This document shows, in pieces, positions 10,596 through 60,538 of a stretch of 64,000 bases of DNA. How positions within the stretch are numbered: position 1 is the first letter of the stretch; the number at the start of each line of letters is the position of its first letter. The stretch covers positions 62,001-126,000 of IMG/VR virus record IMGVR_UViG_3300031251_000001, one strand, 5' to 3'. The notes under the pieces were generated by a model. The model saw nothing but the letters and a program-made list of their open reading frames with translations. It was not told where the DNA came from and searched no databases. The position numbers and the translations under genes are program-made.

Positions 10596-10613
10596 CCAAA
10601 ATACGTATTTTGG
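10596..10613. repeat. Dispersed perfect palindrome CCAAAATACGTATTTTGG, copy 1
   Basis: 18-bp perfect inverted repeat between the chaperone stop codon and the tape measure RBS. Confidence 0.95.
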
Positions 10614-10614
10614 A

Positions 10615-11148
10615 TTAGCGGATGCCCCACTCCTTTTTGCGCAGCTCGATCAGCTTCAACCGTGCTTCTTCAAATTGTACCATCTCATCTTGCTTCCCTT
10701 CAGGGGGAGCCAGGTCGGCGTATACTTTGTTGATCGCCGCATTGAACTTCTTGCGGTAGCTGGGGTCGTTCAGATCGCCGATGGTTTCCTTCACCATTTG
10801 ATCAACGCTACGACGGCTGGCAGTCATCTGCCTCTTTTCCTCTTCCTCATCTACCCAGGGCTGGAGCTGCTGACGCAGATCCTTGTCGAGATCGATGAGG
10901 GTTTCAAAAGTTTTGCGGAACATCGAGCCGTTGTCGTTTGCGGCGATGGTGTGGCCGCACTGCAGAAGAGCGCTGTTGTAGATGATTTGCGTCTGCAGCG
11001 ACGTGACTTTGTCGCTGCGGTAGATCTCCTCGCGAGCCATGTTCAGCAGTCGCCACAAGCGAGGATCATCGCGTCGGTATTTCCTGATATCGATTTTGTA
11101 TTGCAGAATCGCACGTAGCGTCAGGCTCGCTACTGGATCCCCTTCCAA
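10615..11148 (-). CDS. Putative tail assembly chaperone, distal part (possibly reached by -1 frameshift)
   Basis: 177 aa directly before the tape measure gene. Overlaps the upstream ORF in the -1 frame and has no RBS at its TTG. Confidence 0.55.
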   Translation of the reverse strand: MEGDPVASLTLRAILQYKIDIRKYRRDDPRLWRLLNMAREEIYRSDKVTSLQTQIIYNSALLQCGHTIAANDNGSMFRKTFETLIDLDKDLRQQLQPWVDEEEEKRQMTASRRSVDQMVKETIGDLNDPSYRKKFNAAINKVYADLAPPEGKQDEMVQFEEARLKLIELRKKEWGIR

Positions 11149-12089
11149 AAAGACGCATGGGGAGCATTCGTCTCCATGTAACCCATGAGCCGGTTGAACT
11201 CACGGAGCGTCTGAAGGAGCATCCGCTGCATGCCTTCATTCTTGATGTACTTATCGAGCATGAACTTGGTGACGTCATCCAGGGTAGCCGGTTTGACGTT
11301 ATTCTCTCCTTCGGGGCCGCCGTCGAGTTTACTGCCGACGTGCCAGCTGCCGGCTTCCGGATTGGTGTCTTTGTTAAGGCCCATCGGGAACTCAACGCTC
11401 CCACCCTCGTACGGGTTGCCGCTGAGCTTGCGGAGCTGCAAGTAGAGGCGGCAACGCAGGTAAGACTCACCGTACTCCTGTTCGCTGAGGGCAATCTTGC
11501 CGTCTCGCATCAGCTGCATGACGTGGTGGGAGATGGCATCCAGCTCGCGGACGGTGAGGACGCGGAACTGAACCTTGATGTGCCCGTTGAGGATGGAATA
11601 CTCTTTGACGAAATCCAACCCGTTCAGGTGCACCAGGTACTGGAGTTTGTCTTCGGGCGTACAGTCGGGGACGTCGCTCTTGCCCTTCTGCTGGTCGTAG
11701 CCGCAGTAGGGACAGAGGTGAGCGTCGGGGTCTTCGGCCCCGGTATCGCCCGGCTTAGTATCCTCCACCGCCGACTTGGCTGGACCTTCGCTGGGCTTCA
11801 TGGTGCCCACGGCGTCCTCGTCACTCAAGGGAACCTCATCGACCGGGGAGGCGACTTGCTGCTGGGCCGCAGCTGCAGCTGTTTGCATGGCCGCTCCGAT
11901 ACCGGGGTGTCGGGCACTCATGCGTTCCAGGCGGTCCTTATCGACCTCGGTGGCACGAGGGTCCAGAGCCTCGCCCGTCGCCAGGCTGCGCGGCATGGTC
12001 GGCTTGGGAGGAGGCGGCGGCATGGGCCGATCCTCTTTGGTCGCAGTAGCCAGACGGAGTGCTTCGGGCGGGAGGTTCTTGGCTGCCAT
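11130..12089 (-). CDS. Putative tail assembly chaperone
   Basis: 319 aa with a disordered N-terminus, CPYC and 'VQFRVLTVRE'. Synteny before the tape measure gene. Confidence 0.55.
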   Translation of the reverse strand: MAAKNLPPEALRLATATKEDRPMPPPPPKPTMPRSLATGEALDPRATEVDKDRLERMSARHPGIGAAMQTAAAAAQQQVASPVDEVPLSDEDAVGTMKPSEGPAKSAVEDTKPGDTGAEDPDAHLCPYCGYDQQKGKSDVPDCTPEDKLQYLVHLNGLDFVKEYSILNGHIKVQFRVLTVRELDAISHHVMQLMRDGKIALSEQEYGESYLRCRLYLQLRKLSGNPYEGGSVEFPMGLNKDTNPEAGSWHVGSKLDGGPEGENNVKPATLDDVTKFMLDKYIKNEGMQRMLLQTLREFNRLMGYMETNAPHASFWKGIQ

Positions 12090-12091
12090 GA

Positions 12092-20977: not shown

Positions 20978-21009
20978 GCTAAAGAAAAAGATCGGGGCCG
21001 AAGCCCCGA
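20978..21009 (-). terminator. Intrinsic terminator with TTTTCTTTAGC tail
   Basis: TCGGGGC-TTCG-GCCCCGA followed by TCTTTTTCTTTAGC. Confidence 0.85.
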
Positions 21010-21019
21010 CCTCGTGAGT

Positions 21020-22086: not shown

Positions 22087-22115
22087 GTTATGACGCAAAT
22101 AGGGCTGTAATTTAG
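22087..22115 (-). promoter_or_regulatory. Candidate promoter CTAAA-N13-TGCGTCATAAC, copy 1
   Basis: The identical bipartite motif with identical spacing recurs at 51672-51700. Confidence 0.55.
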
Positions 22116-22132: not shown

Positions 22133-22148
22133 CAAAATACGTATTTTG
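22133..22148. repeat. Dispersed palindrome CAAAATACGTATTTTG, copy 2
   Basis: 16-bp perfect palindrome between a terminator and the candidate promoter. Confidence 0.95.
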
Positions 22149-22153
22149 CAACG

Positions 22154-22181
22154 AAAAAACGGCGAGGAAAACCTCGCCGTT
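22154..22181 (-). terminator. Intrinsic terminator ending the capsid operon
   Basis: AACGGCGAGG-TTTT-CCTCGCCGTT followed by TTTT. Confidence 0.85.
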
Positions 22182-22202
22182 GTCATAGTTAGATCAGCTC
22201 GA

Positions 22203-28124: not shown

Positions 28125-29288
28125 TTACTTCCCTACGATTTTCTTGATGTTTTCGAGTCGTGCTTGCTGTTCGGGTGAGGTATTCGGGGCGGTCAGTGAC
28201 CGGTAGATGTCGTAGCCGGCACCCATAGCCATGGGTCCCAGGGCTCGACCCATCTGTCCGCCCGGCCTGATCCCGCGAGTGAGGAAACCGCGGTAGAGCT
28301 GGGGAGCAGCGGTCACCTTGGGGGCCTTGACTCCGGCAACGCCAGCTGCGGCACCAGCACTACCAGCGGCATGAAGAGCATTGCGGCCCTTATCGGCAAA
28401 TTGCTCAGCAGCGTTGATGGAGACGGACTTGCCGGCCGTGCCCATCAATGCTGGTTTGCCGGCTTCCATGGTGTGATTACCTCTCCACTGTTTGAGCGCT
28501 TCTTTACCAGTGTCGAAGATATTGCGTGTCTTCCTGAGTTCGCGTTCCTGGAGATTACGGGCCAGGCTGTTTTGTCCTTTCTCGCCCATGTTGAGCACGT
28601 TTTTAGCGTTGTCGGAAATAGTAGCGTCGCCATGACTCTGCATGGCGTTAGCGCCTTCGACGAGGTTCCTGGGGTCGCCGAGAACTGTGGATTTTACCTT
28701 GGGGCTGAGACCGGCGTTAAGGATACCGACACCGGCACCGATGGTGGTACCAGGTGCGGCTTCAGCCAAGTCCTTGCCTTTGTCGTAACCAAAGCGAACG
28801 CCGCCCTTGATGCCTCGCTGTGCCCAGGAGGGACCAGGATCATTCTTGTAATCCTGGAAGTCCTTGGTGTGCAGCGCGTCGGTCATTTTCGACGGATCAA
28901 TGGCTCCGCCTGGATAAGAGAAGTCTCCCTTGGGGGTGACAGGCGGGGCCGCCTTGTTGAGGCTCTGATAGGCCATGCGACCACCGTAGCCCATCGCTCC
29001 ACCGACGGCAGCACCGCCAGCAGCGCGACGCAGACGATCCTTGATGCCGTTTCCGGTCAAGAGACCCGCAGCACCGCCGGCAACCGCACCGCTGACGGTG
29101 GGGTTGCTGAGGATCTGGCTACCGATGCCTTTGACTGCAGCGGGTGTTTGGACGATGGGATCACGCATGGTGTTCCCGATGCCCTTGAGCTTTTCCATGA
29201 TGGTGGACATCACGCTTGGGTCCGTCGCCTGCTTGTTGTGATAGGCGTTCCCCAGAATCTCCGCGATGTCAGCAGCGACCTTATTCAT
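28125..29288 (-). CDS. Putative internal virion protein with glycine-zipper segments
   Basis: 387 aa with GxxxG hydrophobic runs and N-terminal KVA/KQA. Confidence 0.55.
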   Translation of the reverse strand: MNKVAADIAEILGNAYHNKQATDPSVMSTIMEKLKGIGNTMRDPIVQTPAAVKGIGSQILSNPTVSGAVAGGAAGLLTGNGIKDRLRRAAGGAAVGGAMGYGGRMAYQSLNKAAPPVTPKGDFSYPGGAIDPSKMTDALHTKDFQDYKNDPGPSWAQRGIKGGVRFGYDKGKDLAEAAPGTTIGAGVGILNAGLSPKVKSTVLGDPRNLVEGANAMQSHGDATISDNAKNVLNMGEKGQNSLARNLQERELRKTRNIFDTGKEALKQWRGNHTMEAGKPALMGTAGKSVSINAAEQFADKGRNALHAAGSAGAAAGVAGVKAPKVTAAPQLYRGFLTRGIRPGGQMGRALGPMAMGAGYDIYRSLTAPNTSPEQQARLENIKKIVGK

Positions 29289-30492
29289 TGGGCTTCCTTG
29301 CTTCGCGTGGGGGAGAGATGGTGCGCTCGAGGTTACTCATCTCCTGCAGCTCAAAGGGCTGAGGAGCCGATTGCAGGGCACGACGCAGGAGCGGTTTGAG
29401 GGCTCCTGGCATGCGGGCAATGTGCGGGGCGACGGCGGCGATGTCGTTGGTCTTCTGCACAATCTTGTGCAGCGGTACATCACGGATAGGGTCATCCGGA
29501 TCGTTGATCACGTGACTGAGCACCGCCTTGGAGCGGATGCTGTTCAGATCCTGGGTGTGGTTAGGATCGTTGAGGTCGTCGTAGAGCGACTGGACCTGGC
29601 TGCCGTCCGAAGGCTTGCCCATGATGGACTGCCCCAGGGCGGTACCGATACCGATGTTGCCGATGTCACCCAGGCCGGCTTGTTTCTCGAAATCCAAAAT
29701 ACGTATTTTGGCTTGCTCCACCTGGTCGATCGCGGTCTTGACCCGATCCACGTCGGCAATGAGTTCCTTCACATAGGTGAAGGGAGCCGAGTTCAGGTTG
29801 ATCCGTCCGGTGACGACGTGATGATCACTGGCCCGCTTGTCGGTGTGCTCCAGGCCGATGTCGGTAAACAGGCCATCCATATCGAAGTCGGCGTGGACGT
29901 GCTTGCAGACCGCTTCCACGTCGGCCAGGGAGAGTCGAGAGTGTTGTGGCATCTTGAAGTAGTTGGCCAGCTTCCGCATGTTGAGCAGGGCCGTCTCGCG
30001 GGATGATTCGATATCGACGTTGAGCCGTTCGACTGTTTCGCGGTCGGCAGCCAGCTTCTTCATGATGCCGAAGAACGGACGCTCGGCCGGTTTCTCGACG
30101 TCGGAGGCCGCTTTTTGAAAGAAAACGGCCGGTACTTCGGGCAACGGGTCGACATGGAGCTGCAGCGGGGCAAAAGCGTCGCTAGCCACCTTCACCCGCG
30201 CTGCAGGTGTACTCTTGGGCTTTTCGCCGTAGACGTGGTCGATCGCTTTGTCGATGTCGGCCAGGGGCATGCTGGCCAGTTTGTCGGCGGCGGTCTTGCC
30301 TCGCTGGAATTGATCGACCTGGGCACCGGAGTTATAGATGCTGCCGGCCACGCGGATGAAGCCGGGCTGGAGGTCGAGCTCCTGGGCCGTCTTGACCAAG
30401 GCGTCCGTAGGGTGGCAATCAGCGTCGACGTGGTAACCGATGCGGTCCACGGCTCGTACCAACTTTTGTTCGTCGGCGCTAGTTAGCTTCAC
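29281..30492 (-). CDS. Putative internal virion protein
   Basis: 403 aa with about 10 K-x-A motifs. Confidence 0.6.
   Translation of the reverse strand: MKLTSADEQKLVRAVDRIGYHVDADCHPTDALVKTAQELDLQPGFIRVAGSIYNSGAQVDQFQRGKTAADKLASMPLADIDKAIDHVYGEKPKSTPAARVKVASDAFAPLQLHVDPLPEVPAVFFQKAASDVEKPAERPFFGIMKKLAADRETVERLNVDIESSRETALLNMRKLANYFKMPQHSRLSLADVEAVCKHVHADFDMDGLFTDIGLEHTDKRASDHHVVTGRINLNSAPFTYVKELIADVDRVKTAIDQVEQAKIRILDFEKQAGLGDIGNIGIGTALGQSIMGKPSDGSQVQSLYDDLNDPNHTQDLNSIRSKAVLSHVINDPDDPIRDVPLHKIVQKTNDIAAVAPHIARMPGALKPLLRRALQSAPQPFELQEMSNLERTISPPREARKPNE
29694..29711. repeat. Dispersed palindrome CCAAAATACGTATTTTGG, copy 3 (intragenic)
   Basis: 18-bp palindrome encoding AKIRILD with AT-rich codons. 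Confidence 0.95.
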
Positions 30493-37900: not shown

Positions 37901-38695
37901 GAACGGGCCGGTATCGCGGGCGAGGAGTGCCCCCACGCTTCCTTTATCGGATACGTCAACGGGAAGGCCCCGAAGGTACTGCTTGCGATCTTTAACGTGT
38001 TCGTCATCATCGGACACGTCGGTATCGACGACCACATTCCGGTGGGAGACTTGGTTAAGTAGTTTGTTGTAGTATCCAGCATTGGCCACCCCCAGCTTGA
38101 CGTCCACGACTCCCTTGCGGGCACCGAAGAGGCTGGCGTGATATTCAGGGTAAGACAACCCTTGTGAGTAGCTACGGTACACCGGCAGGAGCAGCGGGTT
38201 GTCCTGGTTATCGTTGTACTGCAGATCGCCGCCGACCAGGCTGTTGTAGTTGGCTTTGTTGCCGCGAGCTCCGGAGTGGATCTGCATCGCCAGAGGGTTC
38301 TTGGCGGCAATACCTTCATCGTAGACCTCGCTGTTCTGCTGTTGCTGAGCAGCCGAGGTGAGTTCGATAATCTTCTTCTTGCGTGTTTCGGGGGATAGGC
38401 CGGCGTGAAGTACCCGTTGGATCTGGGTATCGAGCTTGGCTTGGATACGCTGGGCCGTGGGGCTCTTGCGCATGTGCTCCAAGTCGAAGGAGTAACCTCC
38501 GGTGGACTGGGCGTGGAAGCGACCGATGTCCGAGAGTTTCTTGCTGACGTCGACGTACTGGTCGGGGTGCCGCTGAGCGACCTCCCGTAGTAACGTCTCA
38601 AGGCCCTTCTTGTCGAGCACCCGCGTGTAATCGCGGAGATCGGCAGGAAGGGCCATGTTAGCCTTGAGCTGGCCAGCGGTTGTTCTGATTGGCAT
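34994..38695 (-). CDS. Phage RNA polymerase beta'-like subunit, C-terminal part, with long non-RNAP extension
   Basis: 'SGARGN', 'GARKGVVD', bridge helix 'AGYYNKLL' and trigger loop 'SEPVTQMGLNSKHTGG'. The last ~590 aa are unrelated to RNAP. Confidence 0.85.
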   Translation of the reverse strand: MPIRTTAGQLKANMALPADLRDYTRVLDKKGLETLLREVAQRHPDQYVDVSKKLSDIGRFHAQSTGGYSFDLEHMRKSPTAQRIQAKLDTQIQRVLHAGLSPETRKKKIIELTSAAQQQQNSEVYDEGIAAKNPLAMQIHSGARGNKANYNSLVGGDLQYNDNQDNPLLLPVYRSYSQGLSYPEYHASLFGARKGVVDVKLGVANAGYYNKLLNQVSHRNVVVDTDVSDDDEHVKDRKQYLRGLPVDVSDKGSVGALLARDTGPFKANTVITQKILDSLDRGGHKKLVVRSPIARSSPDGGVYAYDVGLDENGHLVQRGDMPGMTTSQGVSEPVTQMGLNSKHTGGVAGQVAVSGFKSFEQMAQIPSTFQGGAAHAVADGTVQRIQKAPAGGSYVWVGSNRHYVAPEQAATVKVGDSVEAGDTLSNGIPNPEKITMHKGIGEGRRYWTNTMMDLAKSQNMRADRRNLELISRGLINHVRLNDFVGDYIPDDVVPYHMIEAAYEPREGGQRLHPKKAIGKYLESPILHHTIGVKVTPKMAKEMDDLKLDEVHVHDQPPPFNFEMVRASDNLLHDPDPITRMYGSNLSKGLLASVHRGAVSDRTGTSFVPSLAHAADFGREGYFQHKSKPVELPPEGKPLPKVASDTHDPDTSRDTDTHYLVTHGGKEHWYKGPRPQYHYCEGCRKPCHGPRSMGAVPVYDIPSSECKNCTPGYKDSFDKAFDKTADFEPDPSRSQISPLDPVKPPEVPWEKPPGQGQHNPYSAGAPKNNMPKPGFNSSNQYTPMAGMAAHQAQQPQQGQSPFPAPQLPPQMRPQYQQPGLEQYGVQHQWGPPRQQPQQQIEQYPEHESAAEQPPADFAQAPEGNSTTNWIGNQIAQNGTQVAVGRSLGKTLGPKSMIRGGAMGGVGGSTAGMIYDLAAGNPLETKDVVENTLEGAISGVAPLGAGMIAAPALVDAGKNLLGTVSQEDINNRAQQLEQSSPALGTPDSGLTRAKGMLGAAMTPVTSARAAAQISGQHDQYVKGVQDSTNFSKQYFERKTDEALNNPDVAEAQKQVMRNNRGKADMELSEFRTNLATKARPNDFADVEKEVGDKLQQRADIRSQLQMSDSGQNPLPQAEYAKLQGQLIDINKVVKSTEQELTNPSSFSASTLSKALLRDADVEKSPNSQEYVQRLNQAPENLEWGQFHALAKMKSYHSERAQLDKQLAATPNDPKLLARQQELNTKIEDEKKAVKS

Positions 38696-40634: not shown

Positions 40635-43600
40635 CTACCCCTTGTCTTGCAAAATCTCGACCTCATCGTGAGGATCGATGGTTCTTTGTTCTAACGCTTT
40701 TAGCACATCCTGGATGTTGCGGAAAGTACGCAACGGACGTTTGCTCTTATTGGATGTTAGCTCATAGAGCCCACCCACGTACTCCTGTGACGGCATGGCC
40801 ACTGGTGTTTTACGGTCAGTCGGGCTGATCAGGTGCTTGCTGGGGAGCATGCGTTCGTAGGTCTCTTTTGCCGCCTCTTCGGTGGCGGGCACGTGGAACT
40901 GCGAGGCGTCGCCATCGAAGTCCATGTTGAAACCCTTGAGCACCAGCGTGGGCACGTGGACGGCGTTGCCGGCCACCAGCTGCGGACGGAAGCCCATATA
41001 GCCCAGTTTGTGGAGCACCGGGGCGCGATTCATTTGGACCGGCTTTTGATCCATGACGCGGAGAAGGGAGCGGTGTGCCTCGTCATCTTGTTGGTTGATC
41101 GATTCCATGGCGTTAGCCACCGTACGACCGCGGCGAACCATGTCACGAACGATCTCTTTCTTGTAGACATCGAACGCCAATCGCTTGGGGATACCGATCT
41201 GGTCCATGTTCAAGTCAGGGTTGGGCACCACTACCGAGCGACCAACCTGGTCCACGGCGGAGCCAATGAGACGCCGTTGAACCGTGCCCATTTTAGGATT
41301 GCTTCCAAAGATATGCTGCAGAACTCCCCGTACGTTGCGCTCCTTGGACTTCTTTGTAACAGGATCTCCAAGACCCGTGACTGCCTTGAGAGCGTTGTAG
41401 AGGGTGAGATGTTCTGGTCCGACGTAGTCATCGCCCATCTCCTTGTGGAAGTCCTTCACCGCTTCGTTGGCGGAGTGGAGTTCTTTATAGAGCGGGTTGG
41501 CGTCAGCCACCATAGGAACACCTGAGCCGCCCAGTGTCGAGATGCGACGGTAAGCAGGTGGGATCACTGGGGCGGACTTCAGGGTCCAATCGCGTGGGTG
41601 CATGCCCACACGTTTGGTGTCCATCATGTAGTACAGCTTCCGAATCGCTTCATCCCGCTTGGTCTTACTACCCGACTGAAATGCTTGTTTAGCCGTCGCA
41701 ATCTCATGGTCGAGGTTAATACCTTCCAACGCTTTGACGATCGCATCAGGGCCTGTCTTGCCATTCAAGTGCTCCTTCCCGGCCAGGATGTCCTCGAACT
41801 TGCCTTGCGTCAGACCGAGGACTCGTTTGACCGGGTCTTCCATGACCGGGTTGACGAGAGGAGTAACGAGAGGAATCTTCGACCACTTCATGCCGCCATG
41901 TCCACCGGTGATCTCCGGATCGAACAGGCCACCGGGAACGGGGTCCAGGGCTTCACCTGATTTGACCGTCTCGGCGTTCTTGAGGGTGCGACCCTCAGCC
42001 AGATCCTCGACTGACTTGTTAGTCATCGCCAGGAAGTGCGTACGCTTGCCGTCCGGCACGGGATCGATGCCAGCTGCCCGGAGTTGGGCCAGATATTTCT
42101 GGTAAACGGTGGTCGTGTGCGGCTCGACCGGCTTCTGTCCACGCTGATATTGCAGCCAGTAAGTGTCATTACGCTGGCCACGAACCAGGCCCGCATCGCG
42201 GAGGACTTCATAAGCACCGTGGGAAAGGATGGCGTTCACATCCAGGAGCGAGACGCGCTTGGAGTTGGAGACGTGAGCACCGTTCTTGAGGTAGTAGCTG
42301 GCACCGTCTTCGACCGTGATGTCGTAGACCTTCTCACCGGGCCTCTTGAACCGGGTGTAGATGGTGGCGACTACGAGCGTGGCCGGCCCATAAAGGCGTT
42401 GTGAACTTTTCCGAGGAAACCGCTCATGGCCCCGGTAAAGGTCTGTCCGATCGACGTCCGCATCCGCCGAACCAAGTCGGCGGTCGGCTTTGGACCTGGC
42501 TGGTCGAGCTTCTTGAATATGCTTTGCGTCCTTTCGGGCGTGAAGGCTGGTAAGACGTACGGTCGCTGCGGGGCAGCGGCTTCCTGGCCATCGATAGGGG
42601 CGGACTGCTGAGTGGGGTCCATCGCAATAAATCTCCTGACCGGGCTGCAGCAGATTAGCAGCGATCTTCGTGTCGTGGATAAAGAACTCGTGACCGGGGG
42701 TGCATTCCACCACGGAACCATCGGTGAAAGTGATGACCACCAAGTAACGGGGAGCATCGTACTCCATCCAATCGGTGATCTCGCGGTAGACCGGAATCAT
42801 GTTCTCGTTGAGCAGGACCTTCGTGGGAACGCGAACGGCTTTCCGCTTCTTGACAATCTCACCGATCGTGTCGGAACCGAACTCGGTCCACAGCTTGGTC
42901 GTCCCGACAAAGCAGCCACCGTAACCACCCTTGGCCGGCTCGTCATCCTGGTTATAGGCCCCGCTCGAGCGGGCCTGTCCCTTGGATTCCGAAGTGTGAT
43001 GCAGTTTCATCATGAAGCGGGTGCCGGTCGCCACGCCGGGGATCTTCTGTCCTGTCTCGGGATCGGTGATCTCTTCCGAGAGCTTCATGCCGTGTTTGCC
43101 CAACTCGTTGCGGACGTACTCGTCGTGATCTTGCCCAGTGAAATCCTTCACCAGGTAGGGTTGACCTGTCTTGCGGGCGATCTTCCCCAGGCCGAGCTCG
43201 TGGGCCTGGGCAGCGTTGGTGCGGGAGATCATGCCGTTGGGGCTGAGCAGTAGCTCGAAGGGGTTGCCGTCTTTGTCGTGCGGCATCTGGCTGTCAGGAA
43301 GGATCTTCGAGATCACCCCCTTATCACCGAAACGCCCTGAGAGCTTATCCGCCTCTACAGTCGGGTGGTAGGATTTGACGATGACGACGGGGCCTTTCTT
43401 GCCCTGCTGCACGTCCACGACTTCACCATCGTGGTCATGGTCCCAGGCGACCGAGGCGTCCTGCCAGGAGTCCGACTTGCGTCGCAGGAGGCGGTTGGGA
43501 TTCATGCCCTTCTGCTTGGCGGCGACGATGAGTGGCTGACCGTGGGTGACCTTCTGGCCGACCTTGATGACGCCAGTGTCGTCCATCTTGCCGAGCTGCT

Positions 43601-45659
43601 CACGAGTGAAGCGGCCAGGGAACAGATCAGAGAAGGCCTGGCGGCCCTGCTTGGTCTTGTTGTCGACCTCCAGCTCGTGCTGGTAGGCGTGCTCTGAAGT
43701 CATCTTCCTGGCAAGAGAATCCGAGATGACCACGGCGTCGTTGTGATTAAGGCCCTTCCAGGGGACGTAGGCGGAGTAAGCATTGATGCCCATCGCCATG
43801 GTCCCGTGCTGATCGGTATAGTTGCTGCCGGCGAGAAGCTGACCCTTCTGTACGGTGCTGCCTTCCTGGACAATGGGTTCCTGGTTGAGCAGGGACTTAC
43901 GGTTGAAGGGCAGGTTCTTGTAGTAGGGCTTGATGCTGGTCGTGCCGTCCGGGTGCTGCATGTGGATTTCATCTTCCGTCACCTTCGTCACACGACCAGG
44001 CTTATCGGCCGCGACGGCTCCAAAACGATGACCCAACCATTGTTCGTAGGGCTGGTTGGTCTCCTCGTCCACGTTCTGTACGTGAGGAGCCTCGCGATGC
44101 TGGAGGGATAGCGCCTGCATGTACATGCGGGCACCCATGGAGTTTCGCTGTCCCTTGTTGGAGCTCTGGAACGGGATGGTGTTGGTCAGCGGGCTGAAGT
44201 TACGCGACCCGTGCGGGGAGACATAATCCAGCTCGGACTTCTTGGCATAGTCGAGCTCACCGTTGCGGATCACCGGCACATAATCATTCTTCGATTCCAT
44301 CGACTTGTAGAAGCCGATCGTCTTGCCGGCCAGGTCCTGGGGCGATCGCCACAGCTTCTTGCCGCTCTTGGGATCGATGAACTGGCTGTAGAGCCTGCCG
44401 TCGCTGCCTTTGCGTGAAGCAACGCTGGCAGAGAGATCGACGCCGGCCCGTTCCGATTCCGGTGTCTTGACGACATCAAGGAAGCCCAGGTGCGAGTTCT
44501 GCACCGAGCGGGCCTCCAGCGGGATGGCAGCTCCGGAGATGCCACCCTCACCCATGCGGGTGACGTTATGCAGGCGGTCAGCAAACTCAGAGGTATTGAT
44601 TTCTTCCAGGGGCTGGGCGACGCCGCTGCGCAGCAGGACGTGATCCAGTTGATGGGTCAGGGCACCCGAAGGCATGTGCTGCAGGTGGCCCGCTTTGGAC
44701 ATCTTGTAGAGGAGTTTCTTCTGCCAACCCTCAGAATCCTTGGCGATACGCTCGGCAAAGAGGTCTTCTGGCCCCAGGAACTTCTGATACTCGAGCGCGT
44801 CACGATCATCGGGTTTGGCCTCGCCCCGGTTGATCTTGATCAGCTTACTGGTGGCAGCCAGGAGCACGTCCTTGTTGAGCGTGGGGCTGACGTTGCCGAT
44901 CGTGCTCTTGTTGACGAACGGATTGACCTTGTAGCCCTGATACTTCTCGACGAGCTTGGCGATACGATCGACGCCCGGTGCCGCCAGCTCTTCTTTGGAG
45001 AGTAGCTTGTGAGACAGTCGATCAAGTGCGTCACGTTCCTTGACCCCGCGGTTGGACTGGGCGATCTCTTTGCCCCAGTGGTGTTCGATCTCGTCGTCCT
45101 TGGCTCCCATGGCGGTCAGCAGCGGCAGGAGGGGTGCGGTGGATCCGGCGATGTTGAGATGGAAGGTGCCCTTGTCGGGATCGAAGCCGATGCGGTGCGT
45201 CAGGCCTTCACCAGGAAGGATATTGAGGTAAGTCTCCAGTTCGCCGTTACCTTTGCGTCGGTTGTAGACGCCCGGTTCGAGACGCTGTTGGTTACGAACG
45301 GCGTACTTGGTCCCGTTACGCACGACGGTCCCGAAGTCGCTAAAGTGTGGCACGGTGGCAACGACTTGCTTGCGGGAGTCAACCATCTTGTCGGTGGCAT
45401 TGTCGTAGAGCTCCCACGTCCCTTCGACACGCCGGCCCAGCGATCCACGCGAGAGGATGGCCTTCTTGACCTCGCTGGGCTTGCGGTATTCAGGGTCGAT
45501 ATATTTGGGGTTGGTGAGCTTGAGCGTGTGCGTGCGATTCTTCACCGGGGGCAGATTCTGCATAGCACCGAGCACGTTGCCGTACACGTTTTTACGCAAC
45601 GCCCCAGTATCGCCGAACTCACGGAGGGTCACTCCCTCCGGGACTCCATCGAGATCCAT
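40635..45659 (-). CDS. Phage multisubunit-type RNA polymerase: beta fused to beta' N-terminal catalytic part, intein-containing
   Basis: Beta motifs 'KTPESERAG', 'DKLSGRFGDKGVI', 'RFMMKLHH'. Beta' motifs 'NRAPVLHK' and catalytic 'NMDFDGD'. Confidence 0.92.
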   Translation of the reverse strand: MDLDGVPEGVTLREFGDTGALRKNVYGNVLGAMQNLPPVKNRTHTLKLTNPKYIDPEYRKPSEVKKAILSRGSLGRRVEGTWELYDNATDKMVDSRKQVVATVPHFSDFGTVVRNGTKYAVRNQQRLEPGVYNRRKGNGELETYLNILPGEGLTHRIGFDPDKGTFHLNIAGSTAPLLPLLTAMGAKDDEIEHHWGKEIAQSNRGVKERDALDRLSHKLLSKEELAAPGVDRIAKLVEKYQGYKVNPFVNKSTIGNVSPTLNKDVLLAATSKLIKINRGEAKPDDRDALEYQKFLGPEDLFAERIAKDSEGWQKKLLYKMSKAGHLQHMPSGALTHQLDHVLLRSGVAQPLEEINTSEFADRLHNVTRMGEGGISGAAIPLEARSVQNSHLGFLDVVKTPESERAGVDLSASVASRKGSDGRLYSQFIDPKSGKKLWRSPQDLAGKTIGFYKSMESKNDYVPVIRNGELDYAKKSELDYVSPHGSRNFSPLTNTIPFQSSNKGQRNSMGARMYMQALSLQHREAPHVQNVDEETNQPYEQWLGHRFGAVAADKPGRVTKVTEDEIHMQHPDGTTSIKPYYKNLPFNRKSLLNQEPIVQEGSTVQKGQLLAGSNYTDQHGTMAMGINAYSAYVPWKGLNHNDAVVISDSLARKMTSEHAYQHELEVDNKTKQGRQAFSDLFPGRFTREQLGKMDDTGVIKVGQKVTHGQPLIVAAKQKGMNPNRLLRRKSDSWQDASVAWDHDHDGEVVDVQQGKKGPVVIVKSYHPTVEADKLSGRFGDKGVISKILPDSQMPHDKDGNPFELLLSPNGMISRTNAAQAHELGLGKIARKTGQPYLVKDFTGQDHDEYVRNELGKHGMKLSEEITDPETGQKIPGVATGTRFMMKLHHTSESKGQARSSGAYNQDDEPAKGGYGGCFVGTTKLWTEFGSDTIGEIVKKRKAVRVPTKVLLNENMIPVYREITDWMEYDAPRYLVVITFTDGSVVECTPGHEFFIHDTKIAANLLQPGQEIYCDGPHSAVRPYRWPGSRCPAATVRLTSLHARKDAKHIQEARPARSKADRRLGSADADVDRTDLYRGHERFPRKSSQRLYGPATLVVATIYTRFKRPGEKVYDITVEDGASYYLKNGAHVSNSKRVSLLDVNAILSHGAYEVLRDAGLVRGQRNDTYWLQYQRGQKPVEPHTTTVYQKYLAQLRAAGIDPVPDGKRTHFLAMTNKSVEDLAEGRTLKNAETVKSGEALDPVPGGLFDPEITGGHGGMKWSKIPLVTPLVNPVMEDPVKRVLGLTQGKFEDILAGKEHLNGKTGPDAIVKALEGINLDHEIATAKQAFQSGSKTKRDEAIRKLYYMMDTKRVGMHPRDWTLKSAPVIPPAYRRISTLGGSGVPMVADANPLYKELHSANEAVKDFHKEMGDDYVGPEHLTLYNALKAVTGLGDPVTKKSKERNVRGVLQHIFGSNPKMGTVQRRLIGSAVDQVGRSVVVPNPDLNMDQIGIPKRLAFDVYKKEIVRDMVRRGRTVANAMESINQQDDEAHRSLLRVMDQKPVQMNRAPVLHKLGYMGFRPQLVAGNAVHVPTLVLKGFNMDFDGDASQFHVPATEEAAKETYERMLPSKHLISPTDRKTPVAMPSQEYVGGLYELTSNKSKRPLRTFRNIQDVLKALEQRTIDPHDEVEILQDKG
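42264..42914 (-). mobile_element. Intein (217 aa, no homing endonuclease) in the RNAP gene
   Basis: GG|CFVGTT block A, 'ECTPGHEFF' block B, 'VYDITVE' block F and 'HVSN|S' C-terminal junction. Confidence 0.9.
42371..42622 (-). CDS. Nested 83-aa ORF inside the intein (+1 frame)
   Basis: AGGAG 10 nt before the ATG, GC-ending codon bias, and boundaries matching the intein linker. Confidence 0.6.
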   Translation of the reverse strand: MDPTQQSAPIDGQEAAAPQRPYVLPAFTPERTQSIFKKLDQPGPKPTADLVRRMRTSIGQTFTGAMSGFLGKVHNAFMGRPRS

Positions 45660-47501: not shown

Positions 47502-47933
47502 CTAGAATCGGAACCACTTGGGTAGACGTCCCCGGTGTCGCTCGGGGCCTTGAGGATCTTCCGGGGCACCGTGTTCGCGGGCGGCCCGTACCAGCCTCAT
47601 TCCATCATCATACCACTGTTTCACGGTTTCTTTCTTCTTGACGCCGAGCATCTCCAACTTCATGCCCCGATAATCGCGATCGTCACCATTCTGGAAGTGG
47701 TGCTGATAGATGTCTTTGAAGAGATCGAGTGTTGCCTCGAACTGGGTCGGAGTGACACTCCCCCATTGTCCGGTTTTCTCGTCGAGGCGGTGGATGACGC
47801 CGCCTTCATGCCAGAAGGTCAGAGCACCGATCTTGACCAACTCATGGTTAACAGCGGAGACAATGTGCTTGCCGTCCGCTCCCAGAATCCCCGGTGTCTT
47901 GGCCTGTTTACTGGCCAGTAACAGTGTTGCCAT
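47502..47933 (-). CDS. Hypothetical protein
   Basis: 143 aa, GGAG RBS. Confidence 0.65.
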   Translation of the reverse strand: MATLLLASKQAKTPGILGADGKHIVSAVNHELVKIGALTFWHEGGVIHRLDEKTGQWGSVTPTQFEATLDLFKDIYQHHFQNGDDRDYRGMKLEMLGVKKKETVKQWYDDGMRLVRAAREHGAPEDPQGPERHRGRLPKWFRF

Positions 47934-47944: not shown

Positions 47945-47964
47945 TCCAAAATACGTATTTTGGA
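47945..47964. repeat. Dispersed palindrome TCCAAAATACGTATTTTGGA, copy 4
   Basis: 20-bp perfect palindrome abutting the upstream stop codon. Confidence 0.95.
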
Positions 47965-48957
47965 TTAGCCGAATAACTTGGGTAGCGCCAGGTTGACGAT
48001 ACCCACCGCTGCTCCGTAATTCCCCCAACTCTTGTCGGGCATCCCGGTGGCGATGTTCAGCGCTTTGCCCACCACCTTGCCCATAACGTACCCTTGTCCC
48101 GCCGCCATCGCAAGCTGACCTAGCTGATTAGCGGTCACCCAGCCTGGCGTCGCGTTGTCATCCGGGAACTGCTGAGCGGCGTGCATAACCCCCATCGTCG
48201 CTCCGGTGATCGGTGCCGGGGCCTGCCCCTGCCAGAGGGTCTGACCCAGAGCATTGACGTTGATGTCACCAGGATTAGACTGTGCGGGTTCGGCCCCCTC
48301 ATAGCCAATGGTATCCATCGCTACTTTGGGGATGGGCACATGGGGTGTCTGGTGGAAAGGCACGACCGAGGGAACTGGTTCTATCGGTTCCTGCACACCA
48401 GGCCAACCATCTGTCATGCTGTGCCCGTTAGCGTGGTTGGTCAGAGCCCACAACGCCCCAGGGGCGGCACCGAGGAGGCCACCCATCAAGGCACCATTAC
48501 GTCGCAGCCTCTTCTTGTCCCAGCCATCTGGTGTTTTGGAGGCAACCAGGGAACCGGCACCATAGCCCAGGCCCGTACCCAGGAGCCCTGAAGCGATCAT
48601 GGCAGCCAGGGGTGAGGGGGCATTGGGGATGCCAGTCGTGGAAGGCAGGAATTGAAGAGCCTCCAGCCCCTCCCGCAAGGGCCTCGACTCGGCCACCTTG
48701 ATCCAGCTGTCCTGGCGTGCCTCTTCAGCGGTGATCGGCATTTTCTGGACAGGGAGAGCTGAGCACTTGGCGAGCTTCCGCAGATAGGCTACCGGCAGAT
48801 CGGTTTGAATATCGAAGGCGACTTTGCGAGTGAGCGGGTTGGCGTAGATCCGCACCGGACCTGGTAGCAGGAAGAGGTGGGGACGCAGGCTGGCAGCCAC
48901 CGGGCGGGCGAAGGCTGCATACTCGTCGATGCGGTCGGTGATGGTGTCCCAACTCAT
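47965..48957 (-). CDS. Putative internal virion protein with glycine zippers
   Basis: 330 aa with GLLGTGLGYGAG, GGLLGAAPG and several KVA motifs. Confidence 0.65.
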   Translation of the reverse strand: MSWDTITDRIDEYAAFARPVAASLRPHLFLLPGPVRIYANPLTRKVAFDIQTDLPVAYLRKLAKCSALPVQKMPITAEEARQDSWIKVAESRPLREGLEALQFLPSTTGIPNAPSPLAAMIASGLLGTGLGYGAGSLVASKTPDGWDKKRLRRNGALMGGLLGAAPGALWALTNHANGHSMTDGWPGVQEPIEPVPSVVPFHQTPHVPIPKVAMDTIGYEGAEPAQSNPGDINVNALGQTLWQGQAPAPITGATMGVMHAAQQFPDDNATPGWVTANQLGQLAMAAGQGYVMGKVVGKALNIATGMPDKSWGNYGAAVGIVNLALPKLFG

Positions 48958-51250: not shown

Positions 51251-51291
51251 GCTAAAGAAAAACACGCCGGCCCGTACGAGGGGCCGGCGTG
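51251..51291 (-). terminator. Intrinsic terminator with TTTTCTTTAGC tail
   Basis: 11-bp stem CACGCCGGCCC/GGGCCGGCGTG then TTTTTCTTTAGC. Confidence 0.85.
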
Positions 51292-51671: not shown

Positions 51672-51700
51672 GTTATGACGCATTTACGCCTCTTCTTTAG
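51672..51700 (-). promoter_or_regulatory. Candidate promoter CTAAA-N13-TGCGTCATAAC, copy 2
   Basis: Matches 22087-22115 in both boxes and in spacing. Confidence 0.5.
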
Positions 51701-59493: not shown

Positions 59494-59530
59494 GCTAAAG
59501 AAAAGAATCCCGGCCGCGATGGCCGGGATT
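59494..59530. terminator. Terminator between convergent genes, with TTTTCTTTAGC tail on the minus strand
   Basis: 10-bp stem AATCCCGGCC/GGCCGGGATT. Confidence 0.85.
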
Positions 59531-59554
59531 GAGTTGTTTTGCCTTACTGCTTCA

Positions 59555-60499
59555 TTAGACTTTAGGGTGCTTCAGGCCAACACCTTGTGGCGAGCAGCTG
59601 TTGTCGACGATCACATCATCAAACAATTCAGGGATAGTACCTTTACACACGCTGAGGATGCCGTGTGTCAGGTAGCGGATTTCCTCGTCAGCGTGCTTGG
59701 ATCCACGCATGCTGATGAAGTGCCGCAAGGCCCGAACATTGGCAGTAGCGATCATCATCGTCTCGGTGCAATTCGGCAGGCAATTGCGGGCGGTCTGGAA
59801 ACCGATCTTTCGCTTCTCGGTCTTCTCCATGTTGTCAAAGTCGGGACCTGAGAGCTCAGCCGTGATCATATCAGCCGTAGCGTTGTATTCAGCGACATTG
59901 GCGAATCGCTGTTGCAGCCAGAGATAACCAATCTCCGTCTCTTCTTTGGTAGCGTTTCTACCCCAGTTCTCAACGAGCGTTTTATTCCCGGCGTCAACCT
60001 GAAACTCAGGTGGGTCCTGCATGCTGATTGCGGTAATCCCGAAGCTCAGTGACGAGAAGATGCCCTTAGTCAATCGTGGAGGGACCACGAAGGCCAGACG
60101 TTTGGCGTCGACGTATCGTTGACTGAGTTGTGAGTATCCCCAGCCGGCACGGTGACGGACGAACTCGTGGGTCAGGCTGCGGGAGACGCCGGAGATGGCC
60201 ATGGTGATGTTGGAGTGTTCCAGCACCGAACCGTGCCCACTGGAGAGGATGTTACCAACGTAGGCAGCAATGCCACCCGGTCGTGGTTTGTCGAAGCTCA
60301 GGTAACAGGTGCGACCAGCTACTTCGCAGTTTCTGGCTCCGTGGGAGACACCAGGTACTTCGGTCTGATCTTTGATGCCGAGTTGGTCGAGCCAGCTGCG
60401 GAAGTTCTCGGAGTGGAACTCCGGACGCGAGATCATCGTCACCACGGGAGCTGAGATGATGGTGATCGATTGGTTGTGCCGATGGACTTTGATTCTCAT
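59555..60499 (-). CDS. thyX: Flavin-dependent thymidylate synthase
   Basis: ThyX motif RHR-x7-S-x-R (RHRAGWGYSQLSQRY), 'GHGSVLEH', 'ARNCLPN' and 'HADEEIR'. Confidence 0.95.
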   Translation of the reverse strand: MRIKVHRHNQSITIISAPVVTMISRPEFHSENFRSWLDQLGIKDQTEVPGVSHGARNCEVAGRTCYLSFDKPRPGGIAAYVGNILSSGHGSVLEHSNITMAISGVSRSLTHEFVRHRAGWGYSQLSQRYVDAKRLAFVVPPRLTKGIFSSLSFGITAISMQDPPEFQVDAGNKTLVENWGRNATKEETEIGYLWLQQRFANVAEYNATADMITAELSGPDFDNMEKTEKRKIGFQTARNCLPNCTETMMIATANVRALRHFISMRGSKHADEEIRYLTHGILSVCKGTIPELFDDVIVDNSCSPQGVGLKHPKV

Positions 60500-60522
60500 A
60501 GGACCTCGTTGGTTAGGGGTTT

Positions 60523-60538
60523 CAAAATACGTATTTTG
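60523..60538. repeat. Dispersed palindrome CAAAATACGTATTTTG, copy 5
   Basis: 16-bp palindrome about 24 nt upstream of thyX. Confidence 0.95.

What the first reader, a model, noticed from the sequence alone, without database searches (positions are those of the whole stretch)
10596..60538. Five dispersed copies of a perfect AT-rich palindrome CAAAATACGTATTTTG
Seen: exact 16-bp core at 10597, 22133, 29695, 47947 and 60523, extended to 18-20 bp in three copies and spaced about 8-18 kb apart in a GC-rich genome. Three copies share the flank GGATTAG, and two of them abut a stop codon. One lies inside a CDS, where it forces AAA-ATA-CGT-ATT-TTG codons, which points to DNA-level selection. The copies flank unrelated functions (tape measure, moron, internal proteins, thyX). 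Known: parS is a 16-bp palindrome with an ACGT centre (TGTTTCACGTGAAACA) bound by ParB dimers. Inference: these are sites for a dimeric DNA-binding protein that organises, segregates, packages or ejects the genome, rather than ordinary operators.
Basis: partly seen in the sequence, partly recalled or inferred. Interest (0 to 1): 0.75.

Follow-up and report, generated by a model that had tools for sequence, protein, structure and literature searches.

The report
Evenly spaced invariant palindrome in jumbo phage
A 214-kb uncultured phage carries 22 identical copies of a 16-base palindrome spaced about every 10 kb, and its relatives carry different palindromes laid out the same way, so this is a genome-wide array of docking sites for a two-part DNA-binding protein whose job and identity are still unknown.

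Summary
All five exact copies are at the stated coordinates, with none expected by chance. The window is part of a 214,229-bp rhizosphere phage record that holds 22 exact copies, one copy with a single mismatch, and no more degenerate copies.

Most copies fill the short gap between a stop codon and the next ribosome-binding site. Five lie inside genes.

Relatives show the same layout with different AT-rich dyads: CTAATACCGGTATTAG, CATATCCGGATATG, TTCATAAGCACTTATGAA and TAGAAACTGGAATCTA. The in-gene copy is kept at the same codons in two relatives, once as the identical 16-mer and once as that relative's own palindrome.

In the relative with an asymmetric core, sites occur in both orientations. 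The RNA hairpins are marginal. Recognition is therefore on double-stranded DNA by a dimer.

Spacing is far more even than random in both complete genomes (CV 0.50 and 0.34). Site positions are not conserved between those two genomes.

No ParB, integrase or Cro/CI-type HTH was found. The phage encodes its own RNA polymerase and a sigma factor with a separate promoter motif.

The dimer-site reading is supported. The parS analogy is not. The function is unresolved. The closest published parallel is the unexplained 17-bp dyad repeat of Cluster O mycobacteriophages.

The parts
10597..10612 (.). Palindrome copy 1 (18-bp dyad 10596-10613). It lies between the TAA stop of minus-strand ORF 10615-11148 and the start of the 1466-aa putative tape-measure ORF (6175-10575).
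   Evidence: The orthologous site in relative R1 (L224) has the identical 16-mer with diverged flanks.
22133..22148 (.). Palindrome copy 2 (16 bp). In the direction of the genes the order is terminator hairpin, then palindrome, then a 17-nt gap, then the sigma-type 'E' promoter motif.
   Evidence: The same order is kept in R1 (L217) with a 6-nt gap. A closer relative seen in runs X6/X7 aligns over 22138-22181.
29695..29710 (.). Palindrome copy 3, inside a gene. It is read AAA-ATA-CGT-ATT-TTG (K-I-R-I-L) in minus-strand ORF 29281-30492.
   Evidence: R1 (L046, L252) has the same 16-mer at the same codons. L045 has CATATCCGGATATG at the same codons, encoding H-I-R-I-C.
47947..47962 (.). Palindrome copy 4 (20-bp dyad 47945-47964). 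It lies 2 nt after the stop of ORF 47965-48957 and 13 nt before the ATG of ORF 47502-47933, upstream of the RNA-polymerase gene block.
60523..60538 (.). Palindrome copy 5 (16 bp), 23 nt upstream of the thymidylate synthase gene (59555-60499, minus strand).
22148..22182 (-). Intrinsic-terminator-like GC hairpin plus T-run directly upstream (in gene direction) of copy 2. Its last base overlaps the palindrome.
22088..22115 (-). 'E' promoter motif CTAAATT-N12-TGCGTCATAA, one of five in the genome. It is the likely target of the phage's ECF-like sigma factor and is a separate motif class from the palindrome.
   Evidence: The sigma gene is shown.
51673..51700 (-). Second 'E' promoter motif in the window (CTAAAGA-N12-TGCGTCATAA), followed by a short hairpin terminator.
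29281..30492 (-). 403-aa gene of unknown function that carries the in-gene copy. It is conserved and syntenic in relatives.
40635..45659 (-). Phage RNA polymerase gene with beta fused to the N-terminal part of beta' (1674 aa). This is context, not part of the repeat.
34994..38695 (-). Phage RNA polymerase beta' C-terminal part (1233 aa). This is context.

Best explanation
The 16-mer is the invariant core of a 16-20-bp dyad-symmetric site (consensus TC-CAAAATACGTATTTTG-GA). It is read on double-stranded DNA by a sequence-specific homodimeric protein, most likely phage-encoded, which I could not identify. The phage keeps 22 identical sites, five of them in the window, at even intervals of about 10 kb. 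About 90% of its genes point the same way. Sites occupy whatever non-coding slot is available, typically between a stop codon and the next ribosome-binding site. Where no slot exists they are written into codons. Motif and protein change together between lineages. My inference is that each bound site serves a chromosomal domain of roughly 5 kb on either side. It could act as a barrier, an anchor, or a loading point for an activity that governs transcription or compaction of the one-directional gene array. I do not think it acts as a gene-specific operator, a conventional promoter or a partition centromere. What is shown: the copy number, the invariance, the symmetry, the DNA-level selection, the change of motif between lineages, the even spacing and the turnover of positions. 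What is inferred: that the binder is phage-encoded and dimeric, and that it acts by domains.
For: The genome holds 22 exact copies plus one single-mismatch copy, none with 2-3 mismatches, and 0 are expected by chance. The flanks are symmetric: T at -2 and C at -1 mirror G at +16 and A at +17. The only directional signal is the upstream stop codon. Relatives found through syntenic proteins carry their own AT-rich dyads in the same kind of slot. L044 has CTAATACCGGTATTAG. L045 has CATATCCGGATATG. G002 has TTCATAAGCACTTATGAA in six identical copies. G001 has TAGAAACTGGAATCTA at 26 sites, where about 1 is expected. A nearer relative, R1, at 50-67% amino-acid identity, keeps the exact 16-mer at orthologous positions while the flanks have diverged. 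The in-gene copy persists at the same codons in R1, and in L045 as that phage's own palindrome. The codon choice has probability about 3e-5. In G001 the asymmetric core lies 17:9 on the two strands although more than 90% of genes share one strand. The cores would fold as RNA with only -0.1 to -1.3 kcal/mol. Spacing is much more even than random. In this genome the CV is 0.50-0.56 against 0.94-1.04 expected, P about 0.0004-0.003. In G001 the CV is 0.34, and none of 20,000 random placements reached it. Site positions in G000 and G001 coincide no more than chance predicts, with a median nearest distance of 2.8 kb against 3.0 kb expected, P = 0.42, across 54 collinear orthologue anchors. Strong hairpins lie upstream of some sites and downstream of others. 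A separate directional sigma-type promoter motif exists in this phage. The cultured relative Arash uses a directional TGGTATAAGTAA motif 25-30 nt before start codons and has no dispersed palindrome.
Against: No binding protein was identified. There is no ParB_N and no HTH_3. The one HTH_17 protein has only a weak counterpart in R1 and none in G001. At some sites the palindrome is the only conserved non-coding element between a strong terminator and the next SD-ATG. This holds at the UvsX-like gene at G000 15539 and at R1 contig L215, which is what a promoter would look like. The only imperfect copy precedes a low-GC, probably acquired gene, as if it supplied expression signals. The spacing test rests on two complete genomes and on my own crude gene calls. 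Even spacing could also arise from transcription units of similar size. There are no transcript or protein-binding data. The only 'RNA' runs found appear to be DNA and hold a relative, not this phage.
Confidence: 0.45

Rival explanations
1. The palindrome is, or directly overlaps, a phage-specific core promoter. A dimeric specificity factor, or the phage RNA polymerase itself, binds it and transcription starts within a few bases of its downstream edge. That would restart transcription at intervals along the one-directional gene array, as identical promoters do in T7-type phages.
For: The phage encodes its own multisubunit RNA polymerase. The typical layout is stop codon, then site, then 5-10 nt, then SD, then ATG. 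A terminator is followed directly by a site and then SD-ATG at G000 15539 and in R1 contig L215. In G001 some apparent gene starts lie 3-5 nt after the site. The imperfect copy sits ahead of an acquired-looking gene. The motif differs between lineages, as promoters do with polymerase specificity.
Against: The site is dyad-symmetric with symmetric flanks. Both orientations are used in G001. Several sites are followed immediately by a terminator. In-gene copies lie 0.4-1.1 kb from the next gene start. There is no sigma-type -35/-10 geometry. No T7-like polymerase was found, though the control for that search was uninformative. Most strong terminators are not followed by a site, so other promoters must exist. 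Positions are not conserved relative to genes in G001.
Confidence: 0.25
2. The sites are dispersed operators or roadblocks for a global phage repressor. The repressor would silence or time transcription by stopping elongating polymerase at gene boundaries, as described for mycobacteriophage L5 stoperators and phiC31 conserved inverted repeats.
For: There are many near-identical sites in short intergenic gaps across the genome. Dyad symmetry is typical of repressor dimers. One site sits just upstream of a sigma-type promoter in three related phages, with gaps of 17, 6 and 5 nt.
Against: No integrase and no Cro/CI-type HTH were found, so there is no sign of a temperate lifestyle. Stoperators are asymmetric and oriented with transcription, according to the account in PMC4351075, whereas these sites are symmetric. 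The even spacing and positional turnover are not explained. Sites lying between a terminator and a promoter cannot block elongation.
Confidence: 0.12
3. The sites are parS-like centromeres bound by a ParB-type protein for segregation of a plasmid prophage.
For: The site is a 16-bp palindrome with an ACGT centre. From memory, dispersed centromere sites exist in the plasmid prophage N15.
Against: No ParB_N domain is present in any frame. No integrase was found, and I found no plasmid-type or temperate-lifestyle genes in the searches I ran. There are 22 evenly spread sites rather than a cluster. A very divergent ParB cannot be excluded.
Confidence: 0.03
4. The element works at the RNA level. It would be a hairpin just upstream of the ribosome-binding site that serves as a processing site or a translational operator.
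For: Many copies lie immediately 5' of the SD.
Against: Hairpin stability is negligible, at -0.6 kcal/mol for the 16-mer and -0.1 to -1.3 for the relatives' cores. The palindrome is perfect through what would be the loop. Both orientations in G001 would give different RNAs. Some copies lie between a terminator and a promoter. In-gene copies have no start codon nearby.
Confidence: 0.04
5. The sites are targets of an enzyme rather than a regulator. Possibilities are programmed nicking or cutting, initiation of recombination or replication, or strong sites for a host topoisomerase, spaced so as to serve the whole chromosome.
For: The spacing is even. The architecture, AT-rich arms around a GC-rich 4-bp centre, suits enzymes that cut with a 4-bp stagger. 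The phage encodes UvsX-like, Mre11-like and SbcC-like proteins, two of them directly downstream of sites.
Against: No phage type IIA topoisomerase was found. Cutting a palindrome on both strands would fragment the genome. A host enzyme would not explain a different motif in each phage lineage unless the hosts differ.
Confidence: 0.08

Closest known systems
17-bp dyad repeat of Cluster O mycobacteriophages (Corndog and relatives; PMC4351075, read)
   Same: Both have dozens of copies with invariant inverted half-sites spread through the whole genome. Many copies are in short intergenic gaps and a minority lie inside genes. Neither shows a meaningful orientation relative to transcription. Neither phage is evidently temperate. 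The Cluster O authors also predict a dimeric DNA-binding protein and a role other than control of transcription initiation, and that function is still unknown.
   Different: The sequences are unrelated: GC-rich TGTTCGG-N3-CCGAACA with a free 3-bp centre, against an AT-rich dyad that is perfect through a CG centre. The hosts and phage types differ: a 70-kb siphovirus of Mycobacterium against ~210-kb phages that encode their own RNA polymerase. Cluster O sites are denser at one genome end, whereas these are evenly spaced at 8-10 kb. The change of motif between related lineages and the changed in-gene site have not been described for Cluster O.
phiC31 conserved inverted repeats and mycobacteriophage L5 stoperators (phiC31 recalled from memory; L5 as summarised in PMC4351075)
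   Same: Both are highly conserved sites bound by a phage protein and repeated in intergenic gaps across the phage genome.
   Different: Those phages are temperate and their sites are bound by the lysogeny repressor. No integrase or Cro/CI-type HTH was found here. Stoperators are asymmetric and oriented with transcription.
parS/ParB, including the dispersed centromere sites of plasmid prophage N15 (from memory)
   Same: A 16-bp palindrome bound by a dimer. In N15 there are several copies in different parts of the genome.
   Different: No ParB_N domain was found. There are 22 evenly spaced sites rather than a few. There is no evidence of a plasmid lifestyle.
Chromosome-organising site arrays of bacteria: matS/MatP, Noc-binding sites, SlmA-binding sites (from memory)
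   Same: About 20-70 dispersed palindromic sites define the territory in which a dimeric protein acts. Their function depends on distribution along the chromosome rather than on neighbouring genes.
   Different: Those motifs are degenerate, mostly lie inside genes, and are confined to one chromosomal region. No homologous proteins were tested or found here. These sites are invariant and cover the whole genome.
Repeated promoters of phage-encoded RNA polymerases (T7 group; the directional TGGTATAAGTAA motif of Salmonella phage Arash)
   Same: Both are near-identical copies in short intergenic gaps, occasionally inside genes, ahead of genes in a one-directional array. The sequence differs between related phages.
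   Different: Those motifs are asymmetric, occur in one orientation only, and lie about 25-30 nt or more from the start codon. The palindrome is symmetric, works in either orientation in G001, and can abut the SD or a terminator.

Membership tests
parS/ParB partition site | A ParB-family protein (ParB_N domain) is encoded by the same replicon | tested here: not met
   PF02195 search of all six frames of the 214-kb record found no match at E<=1. The control genomes gave hits.
parS/ParB partition site | A short palindromic site bound by a dimer | tested here: met
   A perfect 16-bp palindrome, extending to 18-20 bp in some copies. Binding itself cannot be tested with these tools.
parS/ParB partition site | One or a few sites, clustered at a centromere or origin-proximal region, on a replicon that must be segregated | tested here: not met
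   There are 22 sites spread evenly over 214 kb. No integrase was found and I found no plasmid-type genes in the searches I ran. ParA was not searched.
Dispersed repressor operators (L5 stoperators, phiC31 conserved inverted repeats) | A temperate phage with a lysogeny repressor that binds the sites | tested here: not met
   No tyrosine integrase and no HTH_3 domain were found. Serine integrases and other repressor folds were not searched.
Dispersed repressor operators (L5 stoperators, phiC31 conserved inverted repeats) | Many near-identical sites in short intergenic gaps across the genome | tested here: met
   16-17 of the 22 exact sites are intergenic, in a genome that is about 90% coding.
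Dispersed repressor operators (L5 stoperators, phiC31 conserved inverted repeats) | For stoperators: an asymmetric site in one orientation relative to transcription | tested here: not met
   The site is a perfect dyad. In G001 the asymmetric core lies 17:9 on the two strands.
Promoter of a phage-encoded RNA polymerase | A phage RNA polymerase is encoded | tested here: met
   One multisubunit set (beta fused to beta' N-terminal part, and beta' C-terminal part) and one sigma-70-family factor. No T7-like polymerase was found, but the control for that search was uninformative.
Promoter of a phage-encoded RNA polymerase | A directional motif in one orientation relative to the downstream gene | tested here: not met
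   Core and flanks are symmetric. Both orientations occur in G001, and the ratio is 5:1 in G002.
Promoter of a phage-encoded RNA polymerase | Transcripts start at a fixed distance from the motif | not testable with these tools
   No RNA run holds this phage. The two 'RNA?' runs appear to be DNA, are stored as contigs, and hold a relative.
Intrinsic terminator or structured RNA hairpin | A stable stem, for a terminator GC-rich and followed by a U-run | tested here: not met
   Folding energies are -0.6 kcal/mol for the 16-mer and -5.8 for the 20-mer. Relatives' cores give -0.1 to -1.3, and -3.2 for the 18-mer of G002. Genuine GC-rich terminators occur elsewhere in the genome.
Cluster O-type dispersed dyad repeat (a descriptive class of unknown function) | More than 20 copies with invariant inverted half-sites throughout the genome, many intergenic and some in coding regions, with no orientation bias, in a phage not evidently temperate | tested here: met
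   compared with the description in PMC4351075. This is a resemblance of pattern only. There is no sequence or protein homology.
Mobile repeat (REP, MITE or similar) | Conservation extends into flanks, with terminal repeats or target duplications | tested here: not met
   Aligning 100 bp on each side shows nothing conserved beyond about 2-4 bp.

The most novel reading that the evidence does not exclude
A clade of ~200-kb phages that encode their own RNA polymerase maintains a previously undescribed cis-element system. It is an array of invariant, lineage-specific dyad sites held at even ~8-10 kb spacing, read by a fast-evolving dimeric protein of unknown fold. The protein would partition or coat the phage chromosome domain by domain, for example as loading points for a protein that spreads or slides, or as loop or supercoil-domain anchors. 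This would be a viral counterpart of bacterial chromosome-organising site arrays. It might also explain the long-unexplained Cluster O repeats.
Probability: 0.3. Interest if true: 0.8.

Novelty: new variant of a known kind. Interest (0 to 1): 0.62.

Why it matters
Dispersed invariant dyad repeats have been noted in a few phage groups, and outside temperate phages nobody knows what they do. This case adds three facts that narrow the possibilities. The motif changes between related phages while the layout is kept. A site written into a gene has been rewritten into the new motif at the same codons. The sites are spaced far more evenly than chance allows, yet they do not stay beside the same genes. 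Together these point to a function that depends on covering the chromosome rather than on controlling particular genes. If that is right, large phages organise or police their DNA with a dedicated protein-and-site system that could be found by sequence alone. Such a system would offer a handle on how 200-kb viral chromosomes are transcribed, compacted or protected. It also gives a simple computational signature, evenly spaced lineage-specific AT-rich dyads in GC-rich phage genomes, for finding more examples, ideally in a cultured phage.

Tried and rejected
1. Literature search for the exact 16-mer found no paper. A broad search on jumbo-phage palindromes found nothing relevant.
2. DNA similarity search against GenBank phages found no match.
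3. Exact-motif scans of IMG/VR, metagenomes and bacterial genomes gave mostly single chance hits in AT-rich DNA. Only the metagenome scan yielded true relatives (R1 contigs). No bacterial genome among the rows listed has multiple copies, so there is no host clue and no support for a host regulon.
4. A protein-pattern search for close relatives of the RNA polymerase in IMG/VR found none.
5. L121, an IMG/VR contig with three CATATCCGGATATG copies, has no convincing homology to this phage, so I did not use it.
6. RNA evidence was not obtainable. The only 'RNA' runs offered hold a relative, appear to be DNA and are stored as contigs, so they give no transcript ends.
7. Candidate binders were sought without success. 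There is no ParB_N, HTH_3 or type IIA topoisomerase. The small proteins encoded just downstream of sites gave no DNA-binding domain, apart from a weak alpha-CTD-like helix-hairpin-helix hit in one and an HNH nuclease in another. The single HTH_17 protein is poorly conserved in R1 and absent from G001.
8. I tested whether palindromes plus 'E' promoters account for all transcription restarts after terminators. They do not, because most strong terminators have neither within kilobases.
9. I looked for a sigma-type -35 element at the right distance from the TATTTT half-site and found no conservation.
10. TACGTA is not avoided elsewhere in the genome (37 observed, about 36 expected), so this is not a restriction-site effect.


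Full report
OBSERVATION. The exact 16-mer CAAAATACGTATTTTG is at window 10597, 22133, 29695, 47947 and 60523. No other match appears at up to two mismatches, and none was found in 100 dinucleotide-preserving shuffles.
- The dyad extends to 18, 16, 18, 20 and 16 bp at the five sites.
- GGATTAG follows three copies.
- One copy is read AAA-ATA-CGT-ATT-TTG inside an ORF.
The genes here lie on the minus strand. GGATTAG therefore reads CTAATCC and supplies the TAA stop of the upstream gene.

WHOLE GENOME. The window is bases 62001-126000 of a 214,229-bp IMG/VR virus record, estimated complete, GC 57.6%, from a rhizosphere metagenome. The record holds 22 exact copies and one single-mismatch copy at G000 33745. 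There are none with two or three mismatches, and the single four-mismatch hit is within chance. The palindrome is by far the most over-represented word in the genome, and its halves never occur alone. About 90% of my heuristic gene calls lie on the minus strand.

ANATOMY. In the gene direction the usual layout is: stop codon (TAA or TGA), 2-6 nt, palindrome, 5-10 nt, GGAG-type ribosome-binding site, ATG. The gap from palindrome to ATG is 9-25 nt. The flanks extend the dyad: T at -2 and C at -1 mirror G at +16 and A at +17, at similar frequencies. The only asymmetry is the upstream stop codon. Nothing else within 45 nt is conserved, so this is not a mobile repeat. Five copies lie inside genes (39032, 49491, 91695 and probably 20898 and 135262). 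Downstream genes are functionally mixed:
- a UvsX-like recombinase;
- an Mre11-like phosphoesterase followed by an SbcC-like ATPase;
- thymidylate synthase;
- the putative tape measure, so labelled by size alone;
- many proteins of unknown function.

RELATIVES. No other IMG/VR contig has more than one copy of this 16-mer. Relatives were found through the 403-aa protein that carries the in-gene copy and through a metagenome scan.
- R1 is a set of contigs at 50-67% amino-acid identity. It keeps the identical 16-mer. Its sites at L224, L217 and L252/L046 are orthologous to G000 72597, 84133 and 91695. The site at L219:1614 matches G000 135262 with one central mismatch. L219:10309 probably matches G000 143455. 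The intergenic flanks have diverged.
- L044 comes from a 224-kb contig with GC 64% and is syntenic. It has CTAATACCGGTATTAG and TAATACCGGTATTA, 9.3 kb apart, each abutting an SD.
- L045 (GC 70%) has CATATCCGGATATG.
- G002 is a 46-kb fragment. It has six identical copies of TTCATAAG-CA-CTTATGAA.
- G001 is a 208-kb record estimated 93% complete. It has the imperfect dyad TAGAAACTGG[A/C][A/T]TCTA, with 17 sites at up to 3 mismatches and 26 sites by a weight matrix, where about 1 is expected.
All of these motifs have AT-rich arms around a GC-rich centre, in GC-rich genomes.

THE IN-GENE COPY. In this phage it encodes K-I-R-I-L. R1's protein is 50% identical and has the same five codons (S-K-I-R-I-L). 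L045's protein is 36% identical and has H-I-R-I-C written as CAT-ATC-CGG-ATA-TG, a different palindrome at the same codons. Given this genome's codon usage, AAA-ATA-CGT-ATT-TTG has probability about 3e-5. It also shows that the site was rewritten when the motif changed.

DNA OR RNA, SYMMETRIC OR DIRECTIONAL.
- The invariant cores would fold as RNA with only -0.1 to -1.3 kcal/mol, and the 20-mer with -5.8.
- Three of the motifs are perfect through what would be the loop.
- G001's core is asymmetric yet lies 17:9 on the two strands, while more than 90% of its genes share one strand.
- G002's asymmetric centre is oriented 5:1.
Recognition is therefore on duplex DNA and is functionally symmetric, which indicates a homodimer. 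This is inference, not shown.

SPACING AND TURNOVER. Intervals between sites are much more even than random. In this genome the CV is 0.50-0.56, against 0.94 for uniform placement and 1.04 for random intergenic gaps (P about 0.0004-0.003). In G001 the CV is 0.34 with intervals mostly 6-10.5 kb, and none of 20,000 random placements reached it. G000 and G001 share 60 reciprocal-best proteins at a mean of 34% identity and are largely collinear. Despite this, their site positions coincide no more than chance. The median nearest distance is 2.8 kb against 3.0 kb expected (P = 0.42). Positions are thus kept over short evolutionary distances (R1) and lost over long ones, while even coverage is maintained.

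TRANSCRIPTION CONTEXT.
- The phage has one RNA-polymerase set: a 1674-aa protein fusing beta with the N-terminal part of beta', and a 1233-aa beta' C-terminal part. It also has one ECF-like sigma factor.
- The nearest named relative is Salmonella phage Arash, about 30% identical in the polymerase. In Arash the polymerase subunits and a sigma factor are found in virions (PMC10585845).
- A separate directional motif occurs five times: CTAAAyT-N12-TGCGTCATAA, followed after 3-4 nt by ATGAACGG or a close variant. It looks like the sigma-dependent promoter.
- At G000 84133 (window 22133) the order is terminator, palindrome, this promoter. The same order is kept in R1, with a gap of 6 nt instead of 17.
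- Strong hairpins and terminators lie just upstream of some sites (15539, 84133; G001 92019, 138439). They lie just downstream of others (165219; G001 11293, 71680, 111875, 198521).
- Most strong terminators have no palindrome or 'E' promoter nearby, so other promoters must exist.
- Arash has a directional TGGTATAAGTAA motif in 16 copies, all in one orientation, 25-30 nt before start codons. It has no dispersed palindrome in the 162 kb I examined. That is what a promoter class looks like in this group, and the palindrome does not look like it.

SEARCH FOR A BINDER. I found no ParB_N, tyrosine integrase, T7-like polymerase (control uninformative), type IIA topoisomerase or HTH_3. One HTH_17 protein (G000 138697-139125, minus strand) has only a weak counterpart in R1 and none in G001. 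A 124-aa protein just downstream of site 34418 has a sub-threshold alpha-CTD-like helix-hairpin-helix match. No RNA data exist for this phage.

INTERPRETATION. Four things are shown:
- an invariant, dyad-symmetric element selected at the DNA level;
- a motif that changes between lineages;
- placement wherever coding constraints allow;
- even coverage of the chromosome without fidelity to particular genes.
I infer a cognate homodimeric DNA-binding protein that acts domain by domain on the one-directional chromosome (confidence 0.45). The main rival is a promoter or promoter-overlapping site (0.25). That rival is favoured by the terminator-site-SD-ATG junctions. It is disfavoured by the symmetry, the use of both orientations, the terminators that follow some sites, and the in-gene copies. 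The other rivals are less likely: a lysogeny-type repressor operator (0.12), an enzyme target (0.08), an RNA hairpin (0.04) and parS (0.03).

COMPARISON WITH KNOWN SYSTEMS. The best published parallel is the 17-bp dyad repeat of Cluster O mycobacteriophages. Corndog has 34 invariant copies, many of them intergenic and about a third inside coding regions. There is no orientation bias and the phage is not evidently temperate. The authors likewise predict a dimeric binder and a role other than control of transcription initiation, and the function remains unknown (PMC4351075). The present case is a new variant of that kind. It involves a different motif architecture and a different phage type. It adds three features not reported there: even spacing, change of motif across a clade, and an in-gene site rewritten to the new motif. 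The parallels with phiC31 inverted repeats, N15 centromere sites, matS and Noc sites, and T7 promoter spacing are recalled from memory and were not tested.

CAVEATS. Gene coordinates outside the ORF list come from my own simple caller. The spacing statistics rest on two genomes. The lower-scoring G001 sites (14-17 bits) are individually uncertain. R1 is a set of contigs assumed to come from one phage or from close relatives of each other.

Noticed in passing
window 22088-22115 and 51673-51700 (minus strand); also G000 161409-161436, 47335-47362, 6502-6529: A second conserved motif class with five copies: CTAAAyT-N12-TGCGTCATAA, followed after 3-4 nt by ATGAACGG (TGAACGG in one copy, ATGAAG in another) and then usually a hairpin. 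It looks like the promoter of the phage's ECF-like sigma factor. At least two copies are followed within about 40-400 nt by a terminator, so they may drive small RNAs or leaders.
   Followed up: partly
window 20978-21014, 51254-51291, 59496-59531 (minus strand); also G000 5162-5196: Several strong GC-rich terminator hairpins share an unusually conserved tail, TTTTCTTTAGC. This suggests a common origin or a sequence-specific termination signal.
   Followed up: no
window 40635-45659 and 34994-38695 (minus strand): The phage RNA polymerase is split unusually. One 1674-aa protein carries beta plus the catalytic N-terminal part of beta'. A second, 1233-aa protein carries the rest of beta'. Only one set is present, and it sits among structural-looking genes. 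The Arash homologues are abundant virion proteins.
   Followed up: partly
G000 32625-33677 (L030 12625-13677, minus strand): A 350-aa ORF with clearly lower GC than its surroundings and no family match. It lies behind a 350-bp AT-rich spacer and the only imperfect palindrome copy (CAAAATCCGTATTTTG), and looks like a recently acquired gene.
   Followed up: partly
G000 34024-34398 (L030 14024-14398, minus strand): A 124-aa protein directly downstream of a palindrome has a weak match to the C-terminal domain of the RNA polymerase alpha subunit, a helix-hairpin-helix fold (E = 0.003, below the Pfam cut-off). A phage alpha-CTD-like protein would be of interest for AT-rich DNA recognition.
   Followed up: no
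L121 458-471, 2458-2471, 4926-4939 (IMG/VR contig 3300046516_000274): A 6.9-kb viral contig with no clear homology to this phage has three copies of AG-CATATCCGGATATG-C. Each starts right after a stop codon. In one, the terminal ATG is the start codon of a 662-aa ORF. This may be an independent example of the same phenomenon.
   Followed up: partly
Salmonella phage Arash OQ632216.1, around 26.6, 66.4, 138.5 and 173.3 kb (L041, L043, L042): Four pairs of inverted GGTTACAACGTTTGAA-containing repeats lie 146 bp apart, each within a longer conserved block. Separately there are 16 one-directional TGGTATAAGTAA promoter-like motifs. I did not find either described in the passages of the Arash paper that I read.
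   Followed up: no
window 22138-22181 and 23303-24907: Two wastewater runs labelled RNA, but probably DNA, contain a closer relative that is about 82% identical across the 317-aa gene. Its copy of the site-2 region aligns, but the half of the palindrome nearest the promoter appears to differ at two bases.
   Followed up: partly
window 52974-58844 (plus strand): A 1956-aa ORF on the minority strand has repeated matches to head-decoration and virion-protein families. It is flanked by terminators and has no palindrome nearby.
   Followed up: no
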